This document shows, piece after piece, positions 3,751-33,991 of a stretch of 34,644 nucleotides of DNA. The translations under genes were made by a program, and so were the position numbers. The stretch spans positions 1 to 34,644 of the forward strand of contig NW_021831678.1 in NCBI RefSeq assembly GCF_006345805.1, given 5' to 3'. The DNA comes from Octopus sinensis (taxonomy: Eukaryota). Positions within the stretch are counted from its first letter, which is position 1. Each line of letters opens with the position of its first letter. Under the pieces are notes generated by a model. It ran no database searches. It was not told the DNA's origin and was given only the letters and a program-made list of their open reading frames with translations.

Positions 3751-4119
3751 GTGCATGTGTTTATTATTGTACTGGTCTTTCTCACTGAACGGCGTTCATT
3801 ATGGTACACAAGTTGAATTTTTATTATTCTATTACATCGACCAGACCAGGTTAATTCCAAGTTGATCCCCATCCGAGGACGGTGTATCTGATAAATCAAA
3901 TAAGTGCATCAGAAACTAACTAAAACTAAAAGAAATACCACAAGGGTTTTTTGGTTCAAGATACAGAGTCTCTGACATACCGCACACACACACACACACC
4001 ACACACACACGCACACACATGCATATAAATGCATTGTTGCAGTATCAGTGGAAATGTCATGTGCACACAAATACTCTTCAGATTCAGAAAATAATTTTTT
4101 GTTCGCAAAAATGTTTTGT

Positions 4120-4515
4120 GTATGTGTGGCATGTAGCTTGCTTACCAACCACATGGTTCCGGATTCAGTCTCACTGCGTGGCACCTTGGGCAAGTGTCTT
4201 CTACTATAGCCTCGGGCCGACCAAAGCCTTGCGTGTGGATATGGTAGACGGAAACTGAAAGAAGCCCGTCGTATATATGTATGTATATATATATATAGGT
4301 GTGCGTGTTTGTGTGTGTGTGTTTGTGTGTCTGTGTTTGTACCCCTCCCCAACATCGCTTGACAACCGATGCTTGTGTGTTTACGTCCCCGATAAAAGAG
4401 AGACCAATAAAATAACTACTAGGCGTACAAAGACTAAGTCTTGGGGTCGATTTGCTCGACTAAAGACTATGCTCCAGCATGGCCGCAGTCAAATGACTGA
4501 AAGAAACAAAAGAAA
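4120..4515 (+). mobile_element. tRNA-derived SINE family B (internal microsatellite, LINE-like 3' hairpin)
   Basis: CCTTGGGCAAGTGTCTTCTACTATAGCC central domain, TA/TG tract, tail CCAGCATGGCCGCAGTCAAATGACTGAAA; 9 copies in the window. Confidence 0.9.
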
Positions 4516-4599
4516 CAACAGTTAGCTCTCCACAGATCCAAGATGTAACCCTCAACAGAGTTATGGCCTAACATCTAGGGCAGTACTTTTCGATAGGAA

Positions 4600-4720
4600 A
4601 GCAGATGTTCGTGACGGCGCCCAAAGGAAGGTTACCCCTAACAATTGGAGACGATTGAGCGCGGCTGTTTTCAGGCTGTTGACTGGATACTGACCTTCTT
4701 TAGGCGACAATATGTTTCGA
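4600..4720 (+). pseudogene. Possible I-group LINE C-terminal remnant
   Basis: Translates ...RRLSAAVFRLLTGY*..., resembling the FRLxTGH motif; a single weak motif. Confidence 0.25.
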
Positions 4721-4729
4721 TACTGGAAG

Positions 4730-4761
<32 letters not shown>

Positions 4762-5200
4762 TGCACACATATATACACACATATACACGCAAGTACACAC
4801 ACACACATACACGCACATGCACACATACATGCACACATATACACGCAAGTACACACACACATACACATGCACGCACATGCACACATACATACACACATAT
4901 ACACGCAAGTACACACACACACACGCACGCACATGCACACATACATACACACATATACACGCAAGTACACACACACACATGCACGCACATGCACACATAC
5001 ATACACACATATACACGCAAGTACACACACCACACATGCACGCACATGCACACATACATACACACATATACACGCAAGTACGCACACACACACACTCACG
5101 TACGCGCGGATTTACACATATACATACACGGGTGCGCACACAGACACATTCAGACAAGCAGACGCATATATACACACATGCACACATACAAACATACGCT
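4720..5200. repeat. AC-rich minisatellite, about 50-nt unit, 6 copies of CACGCAAGTAC
   Basis: Unit ACACACGCACATGCACACATACATACACACATATACACGCAAGT repeated. Confidence 0.9.
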
Positions 5201-5478
5201 CGTACATAAAGAAAAACAATTAGGCCAATACAAAGATAAATGGGAGCAGCGGTTTACATACACAAGTATATATAATAAAACGATAATAGCTATGAAAAAC
5301 CTGGTTAAGAACAAAATTCGCCAATAGTCGGAGTACCACGCCGGGGTAATCAAAGAACTCCAACAATATCAGATATCCCCAATTGCTAAGACCACCTCAT
5401 GGAGGCTTTTCTCCTCCATCTGTTTATTCAATCCTACAGGCACAAGCTCCGTATTGACCCTTTCACTCGGGCCCTTCT

Positions 5479-8261: not shown

Positions 8262-8448
8262 TACTCTTTTACTTGTTTCATTTGACTGCGGCCATGCTGG
8301 ATCACCGCCTTTAGTCGAGCAAATCGACCCCAGGACTTATTCCTTGTAAGCCTAGTACTTATTCTATCGGTCTCTTTTGCCGAACCGCTAAGTTACAGGG
8401 ACGTAAACACATCAGCATCGCTTGTCAAGCGCTGTTGGGGAACAAACA

Positions 8449-10160: not shown

Positions 10161-10541
10161 TACTCTTTTTTACTCTTTTACTTGTTTCAGTCATTTGACT
10201 GCGGCCATGCTGGAGCACCGCCTTTAGTCGAGCAAATCGACCCCGGGACTTATTCTATGTAAGCCCAGTACTTATTCTATCGGTCTCTTTTGCCGAACCG
10301 CTAAGTGACGGGGACGTAAACACACCAGCATCGGTTGTCAAGCAATGCTAGGGAGACAAACACAGACACAGAAACACATACACACACATACATTTATTCA
10401 TATATACGGCAGGCTTCTTTCAGTTTCCGTCTACCAAATCCACTCACAAGGCATTGGTCGGCCCGGAGCTATAGCAGAAGACACTTGCCCAAGATGCCAG
10501 TGGTTGGTTAGCAAGCTACTTACCACACAGCCACTCATGCG
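10161..10541 (-). mobile_element. SINE family B
   Basis: Reverse complement of the family B body; small deletion in the head. Confidence 0.9.
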
Positions 10542-11228: not shown

Positions 11229-11555
11229 CTGCGGCCATGCTGGAGCACCATCTTAAAGGGTTTCAGTCGAAGAAATCTACTCCAGAACTTATTCTTTGCA
11301 AGCCTAGTACTTCTTCTCTCGTTGTTTTTAGCTGAACCAGTAAGTTACGGGGACATAAACATACCTGTATCAGTTGTCAATAGATAGCGGGTGGATGGGG
11401 GGGGGCAGACTCACACACACACACACATATATATACATGACAGGCTTCTTTCAGTTTCCCTCTACCAAATCCATACACAAGGCTATGGTTGGCCCGAGAC
11501 TATAGTAGAAGACACTTTCCCAAGGTGCCACACAGTGGGACTGAACCCAGAACTA
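11229..11555 (-). mobile_element. SINE family B-related, degenerate
   Basis: GCGGCCATGCTGGAGCACC...CAAGGTGCCACACAGTGGGACTGAACCC. Confidence 0.75.
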
Positions 11556-13237: not shown

Positions 13238-13646
13238 TACTCTTTTACACTTTTACTTGTTTCAGTCATTTTGACTGTGGCCATGCTGGAGCACCGCCTT
13301 TAGTCGAGCAAATCGACCCCGGGACTTATTCTTTGTAAGCCCAGTACTTATTCTATCGGTCTCTTTTGCCGAACCGCTAAGTAACGAGGACATAAACACA
13401 CCAGCATCGGTTGTCAAGCAATGCTAGGGGGACAAACACAGACACACAAACATACACATACACACATATATATATATACATATATACGACAGGCTTCTTT
13501 CAGTTTCCGTCTACCAAATCCACTCACAAGGCATCGGTCGGCCCGGGGCTATAGCAGAAGACACTTGCCCAAGATGCCACGCAGTGGGACTGAACCCTGG
13601 ACCATGTGGTTGGTTAGCAAGCTACTTACCACACAGCCACTCCTGC
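13238..13646 (-). mobile_element. SINE family B, near full length
   Basis: Reverse complement of the family B body. Confidence 0.9.
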
Positions 13647-21170: not shown

Positions 21171-21397
21171 TAGGCGTAGGAGTGGCTGTGTGGTAAGTAG
21201 CTTCCTTACCAACCACATGGTCCCGTGTTCAGTCTCACTGCATGACACCTTGGGCAAGTGTCTTTTACTATAGCCTCAGGCCGACCAAAGCCTTGTGAAT
21301 AGATTTGGTAGACGGAAACTGAAAGAAGCCCGTCGTATATATGTATATATATATGTATGTATGTATATGTATATATATATATATATGTGTGTGTGTG

Positions 21398-21428
<31 letters not shown>

Positions 21429-21595
21429 ATGTATGTGTGTGTGTTTACGTCCCCATAACTTAGAGGTTTGGCAAAAGAGACCGATAGAATAAGTACTAGG
21501 CTTACAAAAAGTAAGACCCAGGGTCGATTTGCTCGACTAAAAGATGATGCTCCAGCATGGCCACAATCAAATGACTGAAACAAGTAAGTAAAGAG
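21171..21595 (+). mobile_element. SINE family B, full length
   Basis: TAGGCGTAGGAGTGGCTGTGTGG head to ATGACTGAAACAAGTAA tail. Confidence 0.9.
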
Positions 21596-22089: not shown

Positions 22090-23270
22090 ATAATAATTTT
22101 CCAGATACTCTATCTTCTAATTAGCCTTAAGATTAAATTAAATAACGTTTAATATTGATACCGTCAAATTAGCCTTAGGATTAAATTAAATAACGTTTAT
22201 ATTGTTTAATATTGTTAATAATTATTGTTAATTAGCCTTAAGATTAAATTAAATAACGTTTAATATTGATACCGTCAAATTAGCCTTAGGATTAAATTAA
22301 ATAACGTTTAATATTGTTTAATATTGTTAATAATTATTGTTAATTAGCCTTAAGATTAAATAAATAACGTTTAATATTGTTTTAATATTGTTAATAATTT
22401 TTCAGATACTCTATCTTCTAATTAGCCTAAGATTAAATTAAATAACGTTTAATATTAAAAACGTCTAATTAGCCTTAGGATTAAATTAAATAACGTTTAA
22501 TATTGTTAATAATTATTGTTAATTAGCCTTAGGATTAAATTAAAAACGTTTAACATTGTTTAATATTGTTAATAATTACTGTTATTAGCCTTAAGATTAA
22601 ATTAAATAACGTTTAATTTGTTTTAATATTGTTAATAATTCTTCAGATACTCTATCTTCTAATTAGCCTTAAGATTAAATTAAATAACGTTTAATATTAC
22701 CCACACTCTAATATAATATTAACATTGCTAATATATTTTCAGATACTCTATCTCCTGATTAGCCTTAAGATTAAATAACGTTTTTATCCACACTCTAATA
22801 TAATATTAATATTGCTAATATATTTTCAGATACTCTATCTTCTAATTAGCCTTAAGATTAAATTAAATAACGTTTAATATTAATAACGTCTAATTAGCCT
22901 TAAGATTAAATTAAATAACGGTTAATATTGCTTAATATTGTATATATAATTTTTCAGATACTCTGTCTTCTAATTAGCCTTAAGATTAAATTAAATAACG
23001 TTTAATATTACCAACACTCTAATATAATATTAATATTGCTAATATATTTTCAGATACTCTATCTCCTAATTAGCCTTAAGATTTAACAACGTTTTTATCC
23101 ACACTCTAATATAATATTAATATTGCTAATACATTTTCAGATACTCTATCCTCCCCCCTAATTAGCCTTAAGATTAAATAACGTTTTTACCCAAATAACG
23201 TTTTTACACACAAACTTTAATATTGTTAATATTTCTTTTTCAAGTACTCTATCTTCTAATTAGCCTTAAT
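22090..23270 (+). repeat. AT-rich tandem array, 17 copies of core TAATTAGCCTTAAGATTAAATTAAATAACGTTT
   Basis: TTAGCCT counted 17 times; linkers drawn from a few recurring types. Confidence 0.9.
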
Positions 23271-23331
23271 ATCTTCCTGTCTTCTCTCGAACATAATTAG
23301 ATAGATAAAAACGATAGACGGATTATCCAGC

Positions 23332-24244
23332 ATGTCCAGAGCATGGAGACGTGACGAGCTGGATTTATTCGTACGAGCATGGGAGTGCGCCGGCGGAGAT
23401 AGCCCTAGGGAGGTGATTGCGGCTGCGCTGAAGAGCAGAGGCTACAAGAGGACAGCGGCTCAGATGGAGCGAAAGAGACAGGAATTCGTGCGCTCATATG
23501 CGCTTGTACGGTCGCACATTGGCGCACTTGATGCCATCTTTGAGAACGAGCGGAGCAAAGATGGCAAGAATGGAGACGATGAAAGAAGTCACCCCCACCT
23601 GGTGGGGACGCCGGGAGGAGGTTTTGAATGAGAAACCTGCCCGGGAAGTGAACCCAGGTGCAAGTTCTCCAACCGGCAGCAAGGGCCATGGAGACGGAGA
23701 ACCCGGTGAAGAGGTAGAGGGAGGAAGAAGAACTAAAAGAAGGACTGGAAGAGCTAAAGGAACAGAAAAAGCTCAAGCAGGACCAAAGTGTGAAACAACC
23801 AGAAATAGAAGTGGAACCGCAAAGGATGGAACCAAACAGCGCACACGGGTGTGTATGTTCTACCTGAGAGGTTCTTGCTGGCATGGAAAGGAAGGTTCAG
23901 GCTGCCGCTTTGCACATCGGGGACCCTGCCACAGAGACACGAGGCAGATGGACAAACCATCAACACAAAGAAAAGGGATGGACCACGCACCACCTGCCCC
24001 AAAACGGAGGTACGCAGATGTTGTGCGCGCCACAAACAGCCAACATGATGTTGTCGAAAGAGCAGCTGCTGAGCAACAATCTTTTTTGTGCATGGCACAA
24101 AAGATTGTACAGCAGCTGACCTGGCTTCATCAAACCCAAGCCCGCAGGTGGGACTACCCACTATATACCAGACCACCACAGCAAACAGACACAGGATGGA
24201 CACCGCCGGCAACAACGTACACCTCACCTCGATACTCCTACTGA
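23332..24244 (+). pseudogene. LINE ORF1: Myb/SANT(trihelix)-like N-terminus + CCCH zinc finger; one frameshift near 23550
   Basis: W..E...F..AW....IA..L..RGY.RT..Q..RK...F..SY pattern; C-x7-C-x8-C-x3-H (CMFYLRGSCWHGKEGSGCRFAH). Confidence 0.7.
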
Positions 24245-27180
24245 ACATCAGAGGACTGCAAACACTCAGTAACAGGACAAAGATCCCGTTCCTGAGAGAC
24301 TTTGTTGCATGCAATCAAGCCTTATGCATAGCACTTACAGAAACGCACCTGAAACCGGACATAGCAGATGCGGAGTTACACATACCACAGTATGCTGTAC
24401 TACGGACCGACAGGAAAGAAAGGAGTCATGGAGGTGTTGCTATGTACATCCGTGAGGACCTCACACCCCAGGTCCTCTTGTCATACTCAAACTCGGTGTG
24501 TGACACACTAATTGTACATATTAGGCAACTTGATGTAGTTGTGTGTGCTACATATCGCCCTCCAGATGCCCCAAGCCATGTGGGCAAGTTTGAAGACTGC
24601 CTTATAAAAATAGAAGAAATTCTAACCACATTAGAGCAACACATAGGTGTGCTTCTTATGGGAGACTTCAATCTGCCAATGTCAGATGGCCCGAGGGCCT
24701 TTCTCTCCCAGGATGACAAGATGTGAACGAGGACAGGCGAGGTCCCTCCTGAACCTCATCAACACCCTGTACATGGAGCAGGTAATACTCCAACCAACCA
24801 GGGCAGGTAACACACTGGATCTCTGCTTCACAAATGACATGGATCTCATCCATAATGTGAAAGTGACACCGACACTACTCTCGGATCACAACATGATAGA
24901 GCTGACCATGTACGGGCCAAAAGAGAGCACGGACATGCAGCCTACAAGAAACCCTCAAAATCTTTCCAGCTTGAACTACCATAAGGCAAACTGGAAACAA
25001 ATTGAGAAAGAGATCCGCAAAACAAAATGGCCTAAATGTCTCTCCTCGCCAGACATCGACGTGAAACTTCAACAATTCATGTCTGTAATGCAAGCCATAT
25101 GCTACAAATGTGTCCCAGAGAGAAAGGCCACTGTACACAAGAACAAAATCCCCAGAGAGAGGAAAATCTTAATGAGACGGCGTACGAAATTTTCAAATCG
25201 CCTAAACAAACAGATTGAAAGCAGTGAAAAGTCCCGCCTAAAAATAAAACTGTTGGAAATCGAAAAATGTCTGCAACTCTCCATGAAAAAGAAAGAGCAG
25301 ACAAAGAAGCCTGGGCTATAGAAAACATAAAATCTAACCCCAGAGCTTTCTACAGGTATGCCAAAGAAACAGCTACAGTGCACTGTAGAATAGGGCCACT
25401 CCTCGAAAAGGATGGCACACTTACAGGAAAACCAATGAGGGTAAGTGAAATACTGAATGAGCAATTCAAGAGTGTTTTCACTCCACCCCTTGGGCATCTC
25501 CAAATCACCAATCCAACTGACTTTTTTACCACTGCAGATATAAAATCAGGCGGCGACGATAGAGATTACATCGATAAAGGAAGACGATGTAACAAGGCTA
25601 TAGATGAAATGAAAACAGACTCAGCTACTGGCCCCGATGGATTCCCGGCAATCCTCCTAAAAGCATGTAAGAGAGTCCTAGCAAGACCACTGCAGTTCCT
25701 CTTTCAGAGCTTCCTTGCAGCTGGCAAACTTCCAGGAAAACTGAAGGAAGGTAAAATATGCCCCATTCATAAAGGAGGTAGCAGAGCGGAAGCCAAGAAC
25801 TATAGACCTATCTCTCTGACCTCACACATCAGCAAGGTCATGGAACGAATAGTCAGAAGGAAGCTGATCACCTTCCTTGAAGAGAATGACTTGCTGCCCG
25901 ACACCCAACATGGTTTCCGACCAGGAGAAGCTGTTTAACTCAGCTCCTACAACACTATGACTGGGTGCTGAAACGGCTGCTCAACCACTCAAATGTGGAA
26001 GTGATATATCTCGACTTTGCAAAGCCTTTGATAAAGTCGATCATGGAATGATATGTCACAAACTGCGTGATCTCAACATAGTTGGAAAACTGGGAGAATG
26101 GCTTCATGACTTTCTGAAGGATAGAAGTCAGGTGGTAGTAGCCAATGGGGCCACTCCATTAACACACAAATAGTGAGCGGTGTTCCGCAGGGCACTGTTC
26201 TGGGACCACTACTGTTCATAATGGCCTCTCAGACATGTCCTCAGCCACGCAGAGAGCCACGATCACAAGTTATGCAGATGATACAAACGTTTCACAGGCA
26301 ATACAGAACCCTGAGGACACTAAACACCTGCAATGTGAGCTGGACAAAATATACAAGTGGGCTGAAAAGAATAGCATGCAGTTCAATGCTGGAAAGTTTC
26401 AAGCTTTATACTATCAGCATGCAAAACTGAATGCAATACCCAATGAATACACTGGACCCGGAGGGATTGCAATCCCAGAGGCACAATCAGTGCGTGACCT
26501 GGGTATTCACATGAGTGATGACGCGACCTTTCATGTACATGTTGCTAAAATGACAATGAAATGTAGACGGCTGGCTGGATGGATTCTTAGAACCTTTAGA
26601 ACAAGAGAACAAAAAACCATGATGGTCCTCTGGAAGACACTTGTCCTAAGCGCGCTTTGACTATTGCTCTCAGCTATGGTCACCATCCAGTGTCAAGTTG
26701 ATCACAGAACTTGAGGCGATCCAACGAAGCTACACAAAGAAGATAGCCTCTATGCAGAATGTAAGCTACTGGGAAAGACTCAAGAGATTAAAATTATATT
26801 CTCTGGAGCGTAGGCGGCAAAGATATGCCATAATATACATCTGGAAGATCCTGGAGGGAAGTGTCCTGAACTTTGGCATCGAGAGTTACGCAAATGCCAG
26901 AACTGGGCGCCACTGCGTGGTGCCTAGGACTCCAACCTGCCATCAAGATGTAGGACAAGATTCTGTGATAGCCTGGGCTTCCGAGGCCCACAGCTCTTCA
27001 ATATCCTCCCGAAGAACCTGAGAGACCTGCATGGGGTGGATACAGATGTCTTTAAAATGAAGCTGGATCTCTTCCTGTCAGGTGTCCCAGATGAACCAAT
27101 TCACGGCGGGAGGGGCAGATGAGGGCAGCTGCTCGAACTCTCTCATGCACCAAATAGCAGTTGCTAGAAAGCCTCCATGA
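24196..27180 (+). pseudogene. LINE ORF2 (AP endonuclease + reverse transcriptase), multiple frameshifts
   Basis: LLNIRGL, LTETHL, YRPPD, GDFNLP, TLDLCFT, NYRPISLTS, QHGFRPG, SGVPQGTVLGPLLF, YADDT, LYSLERRRQRY. Confidence 0.95.
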
Positions 27181-27292
27181 AGTGAAACCAAGTAGCAACA
27201 CCAAATGGCGGTGCCCCAGCATGGCCACAGCTCATAAGCTGAAACTAGAATCAATCAATCAATCAATCAATCACTTCATAATATGGCGTTCC

Positions 27293-27325
<33 letters not shown>

Positions 27326-27639
27326 TATTTCTATAATGTCTATTGACCTCATTAGCCATTTAGTTCGGCCTGCAGTGTCAATAGAGTTTTAAAGATAATT
27401 ATCAGTAGCCAGCCGGCGAGATTTAGATTGTGCTTCAAATCCGTCCCACAAAGCCAAATGAGTTTGACACAGTAAGACGGAAACTGTGTAAATGTATCAC
27501 GTAGTTATGCAACAAATTCAAGATGATATGTAATTTAACACAAATATCAAACTTCAAAGCTTGTCGCACAAAAAAGCTAGGCCATAAATAACAAAATACA
27601 AAGTAAAACACATGCATACATACATTTGCACATATAAGC

Positions 27640-27648
27640 ATATATGCA

Positions 27649-27680
<32 letters not shown>

Positions 27681-27713
27681 CATTATTATATATGATATAT
27701 ATATGTATATATT

Positions 27714-27801
<88 letters not shown>

Positions 27802-28099
27802 ATATTACACACATACACGCACTTACACATAAAAACATATATATTATCTTGATGATTTGAAAATTCTATAATGTTAAAAACACTGTTGATGATCTGAAAA
27901 AGGTAATAAATATTACGATCAGCAATAAAAAGCCTGATGCAGACGATTTGCAGCGCAGTAACATTTGTAAGAGCAAAGACGTAAAAAGCAAATAATAATT
28001 GAAGTTTGTTACATCGACATAATTAATTCTGCCTCGCCTTTCATATGATACACTTGTGTGAGAAAGCGGCATATACATATACATATACATATACATGCA

Positions 28100-28135
<36 letters not shown>

Positions 28136-28147
28136 TAATATATATAC

Positions 28148-28199
<52 letters not shown>

Positions 28200-28224
28200 G
28201 CATACATACATACATATATATATA
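27640..28224. repeat. (TA)n/(CA)n/(CATA)n microsatellite cluster
   Basis: Direct reading. Confidence 0.85.
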
Positions 28225-29238
28225 TGATCTAGTAATCTCAAGATTAATCAGCCGAAATTACTACGATGATCCGGTTCTTGACTGAAGACTGAGGGTTTCG
28301 AATGTCCTGTCCGTGTTTATTGTATCGTCTTCTAAGAGTTATACGTTCTTGTCCATGTTGTATTTTTCTACATACCTTAACATATATTCCAGGCCACGTA
28401 CCCTCTTAACATTAATGTGAGCACATATTCTTAATAACTGGTACGACTCTTTGTTTGTCTCTCTCTCTCTCTCACTTTTACTTGATCTGTCCCCTTCTCT
28501 CTCTACTCATCCTCTTTTTCTCTTCTCTTTCCTCTGATTCTTTGGTCTAATCTTCCACTACCCTCCTATTTCTTTGTCTCGCTCTGCACTCACAGGTCAA
28601 TCTTCGACACCCATCCCTTCTCCTCTCTGATTCCTTCTTTCTCTCTCTTCTCTCTCTTTGTTGCGTTTGTCCCTCCTCTCTCTCTCTCCTCTCTCTCTCT
28701 TCCGTTGCTTCTCTTTCTTTTCTTTTCTCTCTTCTCTGTCACGTGACTGCTGGCCGAAATCTGCCTTTCAGCTTCTGACCAGCGTCGTGTTAACATCGTT
28801 GTTTTTCGTCCGCCGCTATAGGCATCGCCGATAAGGCTCCTTTCCTTGCGCCAGAGAAAAAATTTGTTTGCTTGTTATCAGTCGTAAGACACTTGTTGTT
28901 GTTTTCACCGTTAATGCTTCTGTATTTCATGTTTCTGTATTCCATTATTTTTTTGTTTTTTTATATTCGTCCCTTTTGCTGTCCTGGTGTCCGTATGCAT
29001 TCGATCCTTCTTCCAGGAAATCTACGCTCCCAGCTTACTTTTTCTAATGCTCGTTGCTTAGTTTTTCTTGGAGGGCTGGCCGTGATCTAGTAATCTCAAG
29101 ATTAATCAGCCGAAATTACTACGATGATCCGGTTCTTGACTGAAGACTGAGGGTTTCGAATGTCCTGTCCGTGTTTATTGTATCGTCTTCTAAGAGTTAT
29201 ACGTTCTTGTCCATGTTGTATTTTTCTACATACCTTAA
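28225..29238. mobile_element. 1014-bp non-coding element with identical 156-bp terminal direct repeats (pseudo-LTR/TRIM-like)
   Basis: 28225-28380 = 29083-29238 base for base; flanked by (TA)n on both sides. Confidence 0.85.
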
Positions 29239-29256
29239 TATATATATATATATATA

Positions 29257-29304
<48 letters not shown>

Positions 29305-29306
<2 letters not shown>

Positions 29307-29405
29307 GGGAGATTCTTCTTATAGTAGAAGAAATAGCTAAATTTTTTGGCTGCTATTTCTAAAAGCTCGGTAAGTGTAAAAGCAATTTTTTTTGCTGAAC
29401 CCTAA
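29305..29405 (+). repeat. Fragment of the repeat that also follows the 33430 hammerhead
   Basis: TAGTAGAAGAAATAGCTA...GCTATTTCTA...GCTGAAC matches 33618-33712. Confidence 0.75.
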
Positions 29406-29904
29406 TTATATAAAGTAATATATATACATATATATATATATATATTTATATTTTTATATATATATATATATATGTATGTATAGATGCATGTGTAGTGTTT
29501 GTATGTATGGATATCGTGGAGAGAGATTAGCTTCTATTAGCGGAATTATTTGCTCATGGATTATTGTGTAAGGGGCTACAATTTTCAGATGTAGAACCAG
29601 CATGACAGCATGTGACAGGATTCCAATATTTATTTAGCGTTACAATCACCCAGGTGGGGCCTTTTTTTATTTCAGTTACTGTCTGTCTAACACAATTCAC
29701 CACGAAAAGGCTGGCCTGGCACTTTAAAACGGACCCGTGCACAACGTGCGTCAAGGGTTGGGATCGAACTCGAGACGCTGTGATTACCAGAAAAACTTTT
29801 TCACTCTATGATGTGCGTGTGTCTCTTTCTCACTCTTTCTGTACATATGTGTGTGTGTATGTGTGTGTGTGTGTGTGTGTGTGTTTGTATGTGTTTGTGT
29901 GTGT

Positions 29905-30100
29905 GTATGTAAGTATATACATTTTTGTTCTCTCTGCCTTTCTGCGTTCTCTCTCCATTTCTTCCCTTCAATCCTTTCTATCGAAGAGCGTAGGCTCGAA
30001 ACGTCAAACACTTTTCCATTTCTCCCAATTGTCAACCTAATACACTTGCTTTTTGCTCCTTAAACTATCTTCGTCTTTTGTTTTCTGTAAATTTGAACTA
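29905..30100 (+). mobile_element. Short repeat between microsatellites with a decayed minimal hammerhead
   Basis: CTTT-CTATCGA-A-GAGC GTAG GCTC-GAAACGTC-AAAC; related to 10960-11130. Confidence 0.55.
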
Positions 30101-30147
30101 TACACACACACACACACGCATATATGTGTGTATGTGACTATATATAT

Positions 30148-30186
<39 letters not shown>

Positions 30187-30302
30187 TGCCTATGTGTGCG
30201 TACGTGTATGTATGTGTGTGTGTCTGAGTCTGTGTGTTTATGCGTGTGTGTATATTAATGCTTGCTTTTATGTCGAGTTATAACCCTTTCCTGTCGACGA
30301 TA

Positions 30303-30535: not shown

Positions 30536-30921
30536 ATTCTTTTACTTGTTTCAGTCATTTGACTGCAGCCATGCTGGAGCACCGCCTTTAATCGAGCAAA
30601 TCGACCCCGGGACTTATTCTTTGTAAGCCTAGTACTTATCCTATTAGTCTCTTTTGCCGAACCGCTAAGTGACGGGGACGTAAACACACCAGCATCGGTT
30701 GTCAAGCAATGCTAGGGGGACAAACACAGACACACATATATATATATACATATATACGACAGGCTTCTTTCAGTTTCCGTCTACCATATCCACTCACAAG
30801 GCATTGATCGGCCCAGGGCTATAGCAGAAGACACTTGCCCAAGATGCCACGCAGTGGGACTGAACCCGGAACCATGTGGTTGGTTAGCAAGCTACATACC
30901 ACGCAGCCACTCCTGCGCCTA
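30536..30921 (-). mobile_element. SINE family B, full length
   Basis: Reverse complement of the family B body. Confidence 0.92.
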
Positions 30922-31680: not shown

Positions 31681-31889
31681 GAATTTGATGCTGTTCGAAG
31701 GGGTATGGAACTAGCATGATGCGGCGGGGGTGAACCAGCATATGATATTGGGGGTAGAGTTCTAGGCCTTGACCCGAGCATAGAACGGGGATCGACTGTT
31801 TGAGTTGGGAAATGAATGGAATGCCTGGTGTGTCTTGTTGTGGCTACCCCTCCTAGAAGATTGGAAAATGGGCTGGGTATACAAAAATA

Positions 31890-32202
31890 TAATATATATA
31901 TACAATATATAGATATATATATATATAATATATATATATATATATAGATATAAACATATTTATCTCTCTCTTTCTGTATATATGTATATATATATTATAT
32001 ATTACGTCATATGTAAACAAAAATAAGTTTGTTTTTGAAACGTTGAAGTGTATTGTAGAACAAGTAGAAGTATATATTTTTCAACACGTAAATGCTGAAT
32101 AGTATACAAAAAGGATGAAATCCTTTTAAGTGCAGAAAAATTTGTCGGCTTTTAAAACGATTTTATTCTTTATATATACTATTCAGTAATTACGTGGTGA
32201 TG

Positions 32203-32267
<65 letters not shown>

Positions 32268-32467
32268 ATTGATATATATATATATATATATATATAAATG
32301 TATATATATAATATATATATTGTATATATATTATATATACAAACAAGTATATATATATGTATGTATATATATATATATATATATATACGTATATATGTAA
32401 GTATATGTTTTAAACATATATATATATATATTATATAATATATTATATATATAATATATATATATAT
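31890..32467. repeat. (TA)n-rich microsatellite region
   Basis: Direct reading. Confidence 0.85.
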
Positions 32468-33030
32468 ACACAAAATTTAAAGGACTGACCACTAAAAAAA
32501 TGGACAGCCTATATGCTAGATAAAGACGTCAAAATCGCCATTTTCCACGAAAATTATTCTCTCAAGAAAAAATTCAGTAAAATTTCAAAGTGTAAAAATA
32601 ATCAAGACAAATGAAAATTCGGTAGAAAATTCGGGTTTACGTGAAATTTTTTATATAATATATAAATAAATAAATGGAATTTAACGCAGGTGTAATTCAA
32701 ATGATTTTACTTCCGACACATGTTTCGAAGATATCACTGATATTATTCCCTATATATGTATGTATATAATTTAAGAGAAATAACCTTTATTAAGAAATTC
32801 ATTAGTGAAAGACATTATGAATATTAGATATATAAAAAATTAAATATACTACATTAAATATTATCCAAAAATTCACTAATACATTTAATGTCTTTCACTC
32901 TTGAATTACTTAATAGAGGTTATTTCTCTTAATTATATACATATATTATATATTGTGAAATTTGATTTAGAAATTGCTGAATTGAATTTTTCCCTGTAAG
33001 TTTGGAAGTATATTCTCAACTATTACATAT
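32468..33030. mobile_element. Degenerate element related to the 31291 palindrome arm, with an internal inverted repeat
   Basis: CAAAATTTAAAGGACTGACCACT...GCTAGAT...GACGTCAAA matches 31293-31370; inverted repeat 32762-32940. Confidence 0.7.
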
Positions 33031-33768: not shown

Positions 33769-33991
33769 TACTCTCTTTATTCTTTACATGTTTCAGTCAT
33801 TTGACCGCGGTCATACTGGAGCACCGCCTTTATTCTTTGTAAGCCGAGTACTTATTCTATCGATCTCTTAGGACGAACCGCTAAGTTACGGGAACGCAAA
33901 CATACCAGCATCGGTTGTCAAGCGATATTGGGGGGGGACAAACACAAACACAGACACACACACACACATATACACACATACATAGACACAG

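What the first reader, a model, noticed from the sequence alone, without database searches (positions are those of the whole stretch)
23332..24244. LINE ORF1 with a Myb/SANT (trihelix)-like DNA-binding domain fused to a CCCH finger
Seen: the N-terminal roughly 60 aa (MSRAWRRDELDLFVRAWE...IAAALKSRGYKRTAAQMERKRQEFVRSY) follow the W-x-x-x-E...W...IA..L...GY.RT..Q...K...Y pattern of Myb/SANT-like trihelix domains. After one frameshift comes C-x7-C-x8-C-x3-H. Established: ORF1 proteins of APE-type LINEs usually carry RRM, CCHC, PHD, esterase or coiled-coil modules, while Myb/SANT-like proteins are typical of PIF/Harbinger transposons. Inference: a captured DNA-binding domain giving a distinct ORF1 architecture.
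Basis: partly seen in the sequence, partly recalled or inferred. Interest (0 to 1): 0.75.

Follow-up and report, generated by a model that had tools for sequence, protein, structure and literature searches.

The report
Octopus LINE ORF1 with Myb-like domain
A decayed jumping gene (LINE) from an octopus-type genome has a first protein built from a Myb/SANT-like helical domain, a CCCH zinc finger and a long C-terminal helix. Intact relatives in other octopods share this make-up, and I found no published survey of LINE ORF1 proteins that lists it.

Summary
Window 23332-24244 is ORF1 of a full-length but broken APE/RT LINE (about 23290-27275). One extra base at 23611 splits it into two frames.

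The same one-piece architecture occurs in other octopod copies:
- Argonauta hians: an intact element with a 291-aa ORF1 and a 1021-aa ORF2.
- Octopus sinensis and O. vulgaris genomic copies.
- Several database proteins.

All carry three conserved modules:
- **N-terminal helical domain:** about 80 aa and basic. Its only recurrent Pfam match is Myb_DNA-bind_4 (9 of 19 members). The family consensus scores 26.4 bits against a cutoff of 27. The AlphaFold model is confident (pLDDT 88).
- **CCCH finger:** C-x7-C-x8-C-x3-H.
- **C-terminal helix:** long and confidently predicted.

Sister LINE lineages (about 40% ORF2 identity) have the same CCCH finger and helix but a PHD finger at the N-terminus. The Myb-like domain therefore sits in the slot where they carry a chromatin-reading module. 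The CCCH finger is ancestral, not newly fused.

No donor gene was found, DNA binding is untested, and the RT clade within the Jockey/CR1 group is unresolved.

Verdict: a real, conserved new variant of LINE ORF1, of moderate interest. In passing, an abundant ~150-bp SINE-like repeat in the window shares this LINE's 3' end.

The parts
22095..23275 (+). AT-rich tandem array with units of about 48-111 bp built around TTAGCCTTAAGATTAAAT. It ends 56 bp before the ORF1 ATG. It may be the element's 5'UTR repeat subunits, but this is not shown.
   Evidence: TRF rows. There are 15 motif copies, all in 22121-23179 and nowhere else in the window. Unrelated tandem duplications sit directly upstream of ORF1 in L002 and L007. 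Repeating 5'UTR subunits are described for CR1-group elements (PMC13343379). No target-site duplication was found.
23332..23610 (+). ORF1 first part (frame 1), residues 1-93.
23332..23571 (+). Myb/SANT-like N-terminal domain (aa 1-80). Predicted helices are aa 7-20, 25-35, 42-60 and 63-79. It is basic (pI 9.9).
   Evidence: PF13837 matches. AlphaFold2 pLDDT 88. Foldseek top list is enriched in Myb/SANT structures but not significant. pI.
23611..23611 (+). Frame change: one extra base, or an equivalent indel within a few bases.
   Evidence: Peptide mapping. P0142 and the Argonauta and O. vulgaris copies read through this stretch in one frame.
23612..24244 (+). ORF1 second part (frame 2): disordered basic linker, CCCH finger, YAD.V motif and C-terminal helix, ending at the stop 24242-24244.
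23852..23917 (+). CCCH zinc finger, C-x7-C-x8-C-x3-H.
   Evidence: Cys, Cys, Cys and His are invariant in the three-way alignment. The isolated segment scores 21.0 bits against PF00642 (cutoff 20.5), and the consensus scores 23.5 bits. hhalign to the sister-lineage finger gives probability 89%, E 2e-6.
24005..24031 (+). Conserved (K/R)x-Y-A-D-x-V motif, here RRYADVVRA.
   Evidence: Alignment A4. Coordinates.
24011..24154 (+). Long C-terminal amphipathic helix (..AAAEQQSFLCMAQKIVQQLTWLHQTQ..). It is the likely oligomerisation element.
   Evidence: The AlphaFold2 model of the intact relative P0123 has a helix at residues 234-275 with pLDDT 92-94. Conservation is shown.
24196..27190 (+). ORF2: APE at about 24244-24900 and RT at about 25765-26510, followed by a C-terminal region. 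In this copy it is broken by about 13 frame changes. The end coordinate is approximate.
   Evidence: Pfam Exo_endo_phos, Exo_endo_phos_2 and RVT_1 on the pieces. A frameshift-aware alignment to the Argonauta ORF2 covers 24244-27153 at 58% identity, with 13 frame changes and no in-frame stop.
27207..27250 (+). Conserved 3' end, GGCGGTGCCCCAGCATGGCCACAGCTCATAAGCTGAAACTAGA, predicted to form two hairpins.
   Evidence: It is shared by the window, L001, L002, L007 and by SINE-like repeats. RNAalifold predicts two hairpins, and 2 pairs show compensatory changes.
27249..27273 (+). Microsatellite tail, (AATC)6, in place of poly(A).
   Evidence: TRF. Other families end in different short repeats.

Best explanation
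Window 23332-24244 is ORF1 of a full-length, inactivated APE-type LINE of the Jockey/CR1 group in an octopod-type genome. I infer the host from the relatives: every named one is Octopus or Argonauta.

The ORF1 protein is about 303 aa once the single frame change is bridged. It has four parts:
- an N-terminal basic Myb/SANT-like (PF13837-type) helical domain of about 80 aa
- a disordered basic linker
- one CCCH zinc finger (C-x7-C-x8-C-x3-H)
- a YAD.V motif leading into a helix of about 40 residues

Shown: this architecture is one ORF and is conserved across diverged octopod families, including an intact Argonauta element. Also shown: the CCCH finger is shared with sister LINE lineages whose ORF1 starts with a PHD finger instead.

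Inferred mechanism: as in other LINEs, ORF1p coats the element's RNA. Here the CCCH finger and basic linker would do this, and the C-terminal helix would drive oligomerisation. The N-terminal module is an exchangeable chromatin or DNA tether. It is a PHD histone reader in sister lineages and a Myb/SANT-like domain in the octopod lineage. This tether would bring the ribonucleoprotein particle to chromatin or DNA for target-primed reverse transcription by ORF2p.
For: ORF and frame structure.

Single-ORF relatives:
- Argonauta L002 has ORF1 4529-5404 (291 aa) followed by an intact 1021-aa ORF2 with APE and RT.
- O. sinensis L007 has ORF1 in one frame over window residues 1-303, E 5e-50.
- O. vulgaris L001.
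- Proteins P0122, P0123, P0124, P0127 and P0132.

Myb-like assignment:
- PF13837 is the only recurrent Pfam family, hit by 9 of 19 members. The consensus scores E 9.5e-6, 26.4 bits.
- The AlphaFold2 helical bundle has pLDDT 88.
- The best structural neighbours include the PHR1 MYB domain (6j4k), the GT-1 trihelix domain (2jmw) and the DMAP1 SANT domain (3hm5).
- The domain is basic, with pI 9.5-9.9.

CCCH finger.

Domain layout of an intact member (ordered N-terminal domain, disordered linker, finger, long helix).

Sister lineages have PHD + CCCH cluster + helix + Q/P-rich tail. Their first finger has the same spacing, and hhalign gives E 2e-6. No Myb-like match occurs in those loci.

LINE group:
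- Exo_endo_phos_2 and RVT_1 domains, with nearest named hits labelled 'X-element'.
- A microsatellite tail instead of poly(A), which fits CR1-group elements other than Zenon (PMC13343379).

Literature: surveys of ORF1 domains list CCHC, RRM, PHD, esterase, coiled coil and zf/lz, but not Myb, SANT or CCCH (PMC4120745; PMC13343379; searches).
Against: - No individual sequence reaches the PF13837 gathering score. The window scores 20-21 bits and the consensus 26.4, against a cutoff of 27.
- Foldseek E-values are all above 1.
- A profile search of PDB sequences found no Myb protein.
- The canonical second and third tryptophans of Myb repeats are replaced by aliphatic residues.
- No nucleic-acid or chromatin binding was tested.
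- SANT-type domains often bind proteins rather than DNA.
- The window copy is itself dead: one frame change in ORF1 and about 13 in ORF2.
- The RT clade was not resolved by phylogeny.
Confidence: 0.72

Rival explanations
1. The N-terminal 80 aa form a conserved helical bundle that is not homologous to Myb/SANT. It could be a family-specific dimerisation or protein-binding module, and the Pfam matches would then reflect only a shared helical and basic composition.
For: All PF13837 scores are below the gathering cutoff. Foldseek finds nothing significant, and EF-hand, PEX14 and winged-helix proteins are interleaved with the Myb/SANT hits. PDB sequence searches give only chance-level hits, such as ribosomal protein S8 and TFIIB.
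Against: PF13837 is hit by 9 of 19 members, and every other family by at most 1. It is the sole hit of the consensus, 0.6 bits under the cutoff. The match covers the same residues (3-62) and profile positions (2-72) in sequences only about 30% identical. Helix order and lengths fit a Myb/SANT or trihelix domain with a long third helix.
Confidence: 0.2
2. In the window's family the Myb-like part and the CCCH part are two separate overlapping ORFs (an ORF0 and an ORF1), or are joined by programmed frameshifting. There would then be no mutation at 23611.
For: As assembled, the window has two overlapping frames, and an in-frame ATG (MARMET..) exists at 23558 in the second frame.
Against: Every informative relative reads through this region in one frame. 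These are Argonauta L002 and P0123, P0122, P0124, P0127, O. sinensis L007, and P0142 across the exact junction. The same copy has about 13 further frame changes in ORF2, so indels are common here.
Confidence: 0.04
3. The Myb-like segment is foreign to the element. It would be part of a host gene or another transposon (for example a PIF/Harbinger Myb-like gene) that happens to abut a 5'-truncated LINE.
For: Myb/SANT-like proteins are typical of PIF/Harbinger elements (established knowledge). The 5' boundary of the element could not be fixed by a target-site duplication.
Against: The segment lies at the N-terminus of ORF1 in four genomic copies: three in named species and one in the window's own host. 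In all four it is followed by the same ORF2. The exhaustive search found only ORF1-like relatives, plus one lipin gene model that carries a piece of the ORF1 linker.
Confidence: 0.02
4. These are domesticated host genes derived from a LINE ORF1 rather than parts of a mobile element.
For: Some copies are annotated as 'uncharacterized protein' genes in Octopus.
Against: The annotated proteins are mostly truncated fragments (69-160 aa) that end at mutations. The copies are multi-copy, belong to diverged families, and are each followed by ORF2 and the LINE 3' end.
Confidence: 0.02

Closest known systems
PHD-type (Type III) ORF1 of CR1/L2-like LINEs (Kapitonov & Jurka 2003; Khazina & Weichenrieder 2009; Metcalfe & Casane 2014, PMC4120745)
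   Same: ORF1 lies upstream of, and overlaps, an APE+RT ORF2. The tail is a microsatellite. The nearest non-octopod relatives found here have a PHD-like finger followed by the same CCCH finger, a helix and a Q/P-rich tail.
   Different: The octopod lineage has no PHD finger. A Myb/SANT-like domain occupies the N-terminal position, and only one of the clustered Cys/His fingers is kept.
R2 retrotransposon N-terminal domain (zinc fingers plus a Myb motif that recognise the 28S rDNA target; PMC11204384, PMC10499050)
   Same: A Myb-type helical DNA-binding module combined with a zinc finger at the N-terminus of a LINE-encoded protein.
   Different: R2 has a single ORF with a restriction-like endonuclease. 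Its fingers are C2H2 and its Myb motif sits on the RT protein. Here the domain is on ORF1p of an APE-type element, the finger is CCCH, and no site specificity is evident (3' flanks).
Myb_DNA-bind_4 / trihelix family (PF13837; e.g. the Arabidopsis GT-1 DNA-binding domain, PDB 2jmw) and the Myb-like second protein of PIF/Harbinger transposons
   Same: The W..E...L..AW ... I..AL...G..RT..Q...K......Y pattern, three helices with a long third helix, and basic character.
   Different: Scores are below the family cutoff. The internal tryptophans are replaced. There is an extra fourth helix. The domain is encoded inside a retrotransposon ORF1, not in a transcription factor or a DNA-transposon accessory gene.
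CCCH RNA-binding zinc fingers (PF00642; also the PARP12/ZAP-like and Torus/RBM22-type families)
   Same: Cys3His ligands with flanking aromatic and basic residues. The isolated segment passes the PF00642 cutoff.
   Different: The C2-C3 spacing is 8, against the usual 4-6. There is one finger rather than a tandem array. The context is a LINE ORF1p.
L1 ORF1p (coiled coil + RRM + CTD)
   Same: The presumed job is the same: an oligomeric RNA-coating chaperone encoded upstream of ORF2. Both have a long helix suited to oligomerisation.
   Different: There is no RRM, CTD or Transposase_22 match. The helix is C-terminal rather than N-terminal, and RNA binding would be by a zinc finger.

Membership tests
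Myb_DNA-bind_4 (PF13837) / Myb-SANT-like fold | Profile match at or above Pfam's gathering score (27 bits) | tested here: not met
   The window scores 20.0-20.7 bits, Argonauta 19.3 bits and the best member E 1.1e-4. The family consensus scores 26.4 bits. The match is consistent but sub-threshold.
Myb_DNA-bind_4 (PF13837) / Myb-SANT-like fold | Three-helix bundle with a helix-turn-helix arrangement of helices 2 and 3 | tested here: inconclusive
   The AlphaFold2 model (pLDDT 88) has helices at residues 7-20, 25-35, 42-60 and 63-79. Foldseek neighbours include MYB, trihelix and SANT domains with TM 0.5-0.67, but all have E > 1.
Myb_DNA-bind_4 (PF13837) / Myb-SANT-like fold | Sequence-specific DNA binding through the third helix | not testable with these tools
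   The only indirect support is a nearly invariant basic helix 3 (R40, Q44, K48, Y56; pI about 11).
zf-CCCH (PF00642) | Cys-Cys-Cys-His ligand set, conserved across relatives | tested here: met
   C175, C183, C192 and H196 are invariant in the three-way alignment. They are kept in all non-degenerate full-length members and in the sister lineages.
zf-CCCH (PF00642) | Profile match at or above the gathering score (20.5 bits) | tested here: met
   The isolated window segment scores 21.0 bits and the consensus 23.5 bits. Within the 248-aa piece the score is only 17.4 bits. The C2-C3 spacing of 8 is atypical.
APE-type LINE, Jockey/CR1 group | ORF2 with an N-terminal APE endonuclease and an RT, preceded by ORF1 | tested here: met
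   Pfam Exo_endo_phos, Exo_endo_phos_2 and RVT_1 match the window pieces and the intact Argonauta ORF2. ORF1 and ORF2 overlap.
APE-type LINE, Jockey/CR1 group | 3' end with a conserved structured region and a short tandem-repeat tail instead of poly(A) | tested here: met
   The tail is (AATC)6 in the window, and other short repeats end L002 and L007 (L001 ends in an A-rich stretch). The 3' 43 nt are conserved and predicted to form two hairpins. Among CR1-group elements, poly-A tails are restricted to Zenon (PMC13343379).
APE-type LINE, Jockey/CR1 group | Placement of the RT domain within a named clade (CR1, L2, Rex1, Kiri, Daphne, ...) by phylogeny with reference sequences | not tested
   No reference RT set was available. 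The supplements held no sequences. The only indication is source names such as 'X-element' on related ORF2s.
PHD-type (Type III) LINE ORF1 | PHD finger (Cys4-His-Cys3) in ORF1 | tested here: not met
   No PHD match or pattern occurs in the window, O. vulgaris or Argonauta ORF1. It is present in the sister lineages L008 (E 1.1e-4) and L004 (E 0.033), and as a Cys4-His-Cys3 pattern in L006.

The most novel reading that the evidence does not exclude
The N-terminus of ORF1p in this LINE group is an exchangeable slot for chromatin or DNA readers: PHD in most lineages, Myb/SANT-like in octopods. The Myb-like version would give the ribonucleoprotein particle direct DNA or nucleosome recognition, either for target choice or for binding the element's own tandem 5' repeats. 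This would be in the LINE lineage that also supplies the 3' end used by an abundant octopus SINE. ORF1p would then be a DNA-targeting factor and not only an RNA chaperone.
Probability: 0.3. Interest if true: 0.7.

Novelty: new variant of a known kind. Interest (0 to 1): 0.5.

Why it matters
LINE ORF1 proteins are known to be modular. The catalogued modules are RRM, CCHC, PHD, esterase, coiled coil and zf/lz.

A conserved Myb/SANT-like + CCCH + helix ORF1, present in an intact element, adds a new combination. It also offers a natural domain swap (PHD versus Myb-like on the same CCCH-helix chassis) for asking what the N-terminal module of ORF1p does.

If the module binds DNA or chromatin, target recognition in APE-type LINEs would be assigned partly to ORF1p, not only to the ORF2 endonuclease.

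The family also shares its structured 3' end with a SINE-like repeat present in at least 8 copies in this 35-kb window. It may therefore be the autonomous partner behind part of the octopus SINE load.

Tried and rejected
- **Other copies in the window:** none found.
- **Exact-protein look-up of the window's 248-aa frame:** not on record, so the source genome could not be named.
- **Profile and consensus searches of PDB sequences with the N-terminal domain:** only chance-level hits (ribosomal protein S8, TFIIB) and no Myb protein.
- **Foldseek against PDB:** no significant match, so it counts only as consistent.
- **Word-indexed profile search with the N-terminal alignment, to find host Myb proteins or a donor:** it returned only three family members already known.
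- **Structure job that included a row translated from the Argonauta locus:** It was repeated without that row.
- **Target-site duplication search, to fix the 5' boundary:** only low-complexity matches. Whether the tandem array at 22095-23275 belongs to the element stays open.
- **RT phylogeny for clade placement:** not done, because no reference sequences could be obtained.
- **My first guess for the frameshift position (about 23580):** wrong. It was corrected to 23611 using P0142.
- **dN/dS between families:** considered and dropped, because at 30-50% amino-acid identity synonymous sites are saturated.

Full report
**1. What is at the coordinates**

The window is AT-rich, microsatellite-rich eukaryotic DNA. 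A second frame runs to the TGA at 24242-24244 and contains CMFYLRGSCWHGKEGSGCRFAH (23852-23917), which is C-x7-C-x8-C-x3-H.

ORF2 starts at ATG 24196, overlapping ORF1 by 49 nt. It carries APE (Exo_endo_phos, Exo_endo_phos_2) and RT (RVT_1) matches on several frame-shifted pieces. The element ends with a conserved 43-nt 3' region and an (AATC)6 tail at 27249-27273, not poly(A).

**2. One ORF or two?**

The only word-indexed database hit was an Octopus vulgaris protein whose N-terminus (MLKRPHIKTLDNIIEN..) matches the end of the window's first frame. It then continues in frame through the CCCH finger to the C-terminus. In its genomic locus (L001) the Myb-like segment lies just upstream, interrupted only by an indel in an A-run.

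An ORF2 search then led to Argonauta hians. Locus L002 holds an intact element. ORF1 at 4529-5404 is 291 aa in a single frame, reading MSRNWLKDEMRLLVEAW...CRYYIRGKCRHTQNGTQCRFAH...NEQINFLKVAQEMVTHLTWMH... An uninterrupted 1021-aa APE+RT ORF2 follows it.

An O. sinensis copy (L007) aligns to window ORF1 residues 1-303 in one frame (E 5e-50), with a single nonsense codon.

An exhaustive phmmer scan of 1.84 billion representatives found 29 relatives. Among the strongest hits:
- Five have the N-terminal domain and the finger (or, in P0127, its degenerate remnant) in one ORF: P0122, P0123, P0124, P0127 and P0132. Three of these (P0122, P0123, P0124) also keep the C-terminal helix.
- Many others are truncated fragments.
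- Every hit that a source names is Octopus vulgaris or O. sinensis.

One of them, a lipin (LPIN3) gene model of O. sinensis, ends in an exonised piece of the ORF1 linker. It reads ...GHPHLVDAQEENSSERPAREVNPG... in a single frame. This places the window's frame change after HPHLVGT, at one extra base at 23611.

**3. Is the N-terminal domain Myb/SANT-like?**

Evidence for:
- Pfam's Myb_DNA-bind_4 (PF13837) is the best match for the window (E 9.4e-4 on the 99-aa frame, 5.7e-4 on residues 1-81). It independently matches the Argonauta protein over the same residues (E 1.5e-3). Both scores are below the 27-bit cutoff.
- Across 19 aligned N-terminal domains with 47% mean column identity, 9 hit PF13837 (best E 1.1e-4). 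No other family is hit by more than one member.
- The HMM consensus of the family hits only PF13837, at E 9.5e-6 and 26.4 bits.
- AlphaFold2 with this alignment gives a confident model (pLDDT 88) with helices at residues 7-20, 25-35, 42-60 and 63-79.
- The domain is basic (pI 9.5-9.9). Helix 3 carries the nearly invariant R40, Q44, K48 and Y56.

Evidence that is weak or negative:
- Foldseek against PDB finds nothing significant. The neighbours include the PHR1/PHR2 MYB domains, the GT-1 trihelix domain, and the DMAP1 and MTA1 SANT domains (TM 0.5-0.67), mixed with EF-hands and winged-helix proteins.
- PDB sequence searches were uninformative.

I rate homology to Myb/SANT-like domains as probable, about 0.8, but not proven.

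**4. The rest of ORF1**

The Cys3His ligands are invariant. The isolated window finger passes the PF00642 cutoff (21.0 bits against 20.5), and the consensus scores 23.5 bits.

A full-length AlphaFold2 model of the intact relative P0123 shows:
- an ordered N-terminal domain
- a disordered linker of about 85 aa
- the finger, with pLDDT about 73
- a 42-residue C-terminal helix, with pLDDT 92-94

The helix begins at a conserved YAD.V motif and contains the SFL..AQ.IV..LTW motif.

**5. Comparison with sister lineages**

ORF2 relatives at about 40% identity sit on marine metagenome contigs (L004, L006, L008). Their ORF1 has:
- a PHD-like finger (Pfam PHD E 1.1e-4 in L008 and 0.033 in L004; a Cys4-His-Cys3 pattern in L006)
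- a cluster of Cys/His fingers, whose first has the same C-x7-C-x8-C-x3-H spacing in L006 and L008
- a helix (..FLEIMKVLQSDMQQM..)
- a Q/P-rich tail ending in aromatic residues

Profile-profile comparison aligns the octopod finger with theirs at probability 89% and E 2e-6. The Myb-like HMM finds nothing in those loci.

The CCCH finger therefore predates the split between these lineages. The helix has the same position and general character in both, although the profile alignment did not extend to it. What differs is the N-terminal module, PHD versus Myb/SANT-like.

The direction is unresolved and no donor was detectable, since only ORF1-like proteins were found at E <= 1e-3.

**6. Mechanism**

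What is shown is the architecture, its conservation, and its presence in an intact element.

What is inferred from established properties of the domain classes:
- CCCH fingers are RNA binders.
- LINE ORF1 proteins oligomerise and coat their RNA.
- PHD fingers read histone tails.
- Myb/SANT-like domains bind DNA or histone tails.

On this basis ORF1p would bind the LINE RNA through the finger and basic linker and oligomerise through the C-terminal helix. It would use the N-terminal module as a chromatin or DNA tether. The 3' flanks of four copies show no common target beyond AT-rich or microsatellite context, so site specificity is not supported with this few copies.

**7. Known or new?**

ORF1 surveys list CCHC, RRM, PHD, esterase, coiled coil, Transposase_22 and zf/lz. 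They do not mention Myb, SANT or CCCH (PMC4120745; PMC13343379). Full-text searches for these combinations found nothing relevant. The octopus LINE literature concerns RTE and Dong elements (PMC9115989).

Myb motifs in LINE proteins are known from R2, where N-terminal zinc fingers plus a Myb motif read the rDNA target (PMC11204384, PMC10499050). The principle is therefore not new, but its placement in ORF1p of an APE-type LINE appears to be.

I classify this as a new variant of a known kind. The RT clade within the Jockey/CR1 group was not determined.

**8. State of the window copy**

The copy is dead as assembled. ORF1 has one frame change. ORF2 aligns to the Argonauta ORF2 over 24244-27153 at 58% identity, with about 13 frame changes but no in-frame stop. 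That pattern could partly reflect assembly indels.

The 5' boundary is open. A 1.15-kb AT-rich tandem array (22095-23275) ends 56 bp before the ATG and occurs nowhere else in the window. Unrelated tandem duplications also precede ORF1 in L002 and L007, and repeated 5'UTR subunits are described for CR1-group elements. No target-site duplication could be found.

Noticed in passing
window 13240-13400 (-), 10165-10324 (-), 30539-30688 (-), 8262-8411 (-), 21440-21587 (+), 4396-4512 (+), 11229-11361 (-), 33769-33902 (-); also L001 about 4050-4130: A SINE-like repeat of about 150-160 bp has at least 8 copies in the 35-kb window. Its 3' end (GGCGGTGCTCCAGCATGGCCRCAGTCAAAATGACTGAAAC, then A-rich repeats) matches the LINE's 3' end. 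RNAalifold predicts two hairpins in the shared region, and two base pairs change in a compensatory way between LINE and SINE. This suggests the LINE group is the SINE's autonomous partner. ARAGORN finds no tRNA-like head.
   Followed up: partly
window 22095-23275; L002 about 4290-4500; L007 6511-6795: Tandem repeats lie directly upstream of the ORF1 start in three different families, with unrelated unit sequences. The window has AT-rich units of about 48-111 bp. Argonauta has about 100 bp x2. O. sinensis has 152 bp x1.9 in a CT-rich leader. They may be 5'UTR or promoter monomers, but whether they belong to the elements is untested.
   Followed up: partly
protein P0142 (O. sinensis XP_036355764.1, 'phosphatidate phosphatase LPIN3, partial'): The C-terminal ~70 aa of this lipin gene model derive from the ORF1 linker of this LINE family. 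This is either exonisation or a mis-annotation. It was useful here for locating the window's frameshift.
   Followed up: no
window 24244-27153: Relative to the intact Argonauta ORF2, the window's ORF2 has about 13 frame changes but not a single in-frame stop codon. That is an indel-heavy pattern and might reflect assembly errors rather than decay. The positions are not obviously in homopolymers.
   Followed up: partly
window 24005-24031 and the aligned positions in P0122, P0123, P0124, P0127: A short, strongly conserved (K/R)-x-Y-A-D-x-V motif lies between the CCCH finger and the C-terminal helix. Its function is unknown.
   Followed up: no
L004 6544-7878 (-), L006 523-2385 (+), L008 1-1428 (+): Marine-metagenome contigs from unidentified eukaryotes carry related LINEs. 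Their ORF1 combines a PHD-like finger with a cluster of CCCH-like fingers, a helix and a Q/P-rich tail. I did not see this CCCH cluster described in the ORF1 surveys I consulted.
   Followed up: partly
window 21206-21583, 27435-28241, 29160-30283, 31878-32468: There are long TA, CA/TG and TATG-type microsatellite tracts throughout the window. They produce spurious ORFs rich in Y, I, C, H and T.
   Followed up: no
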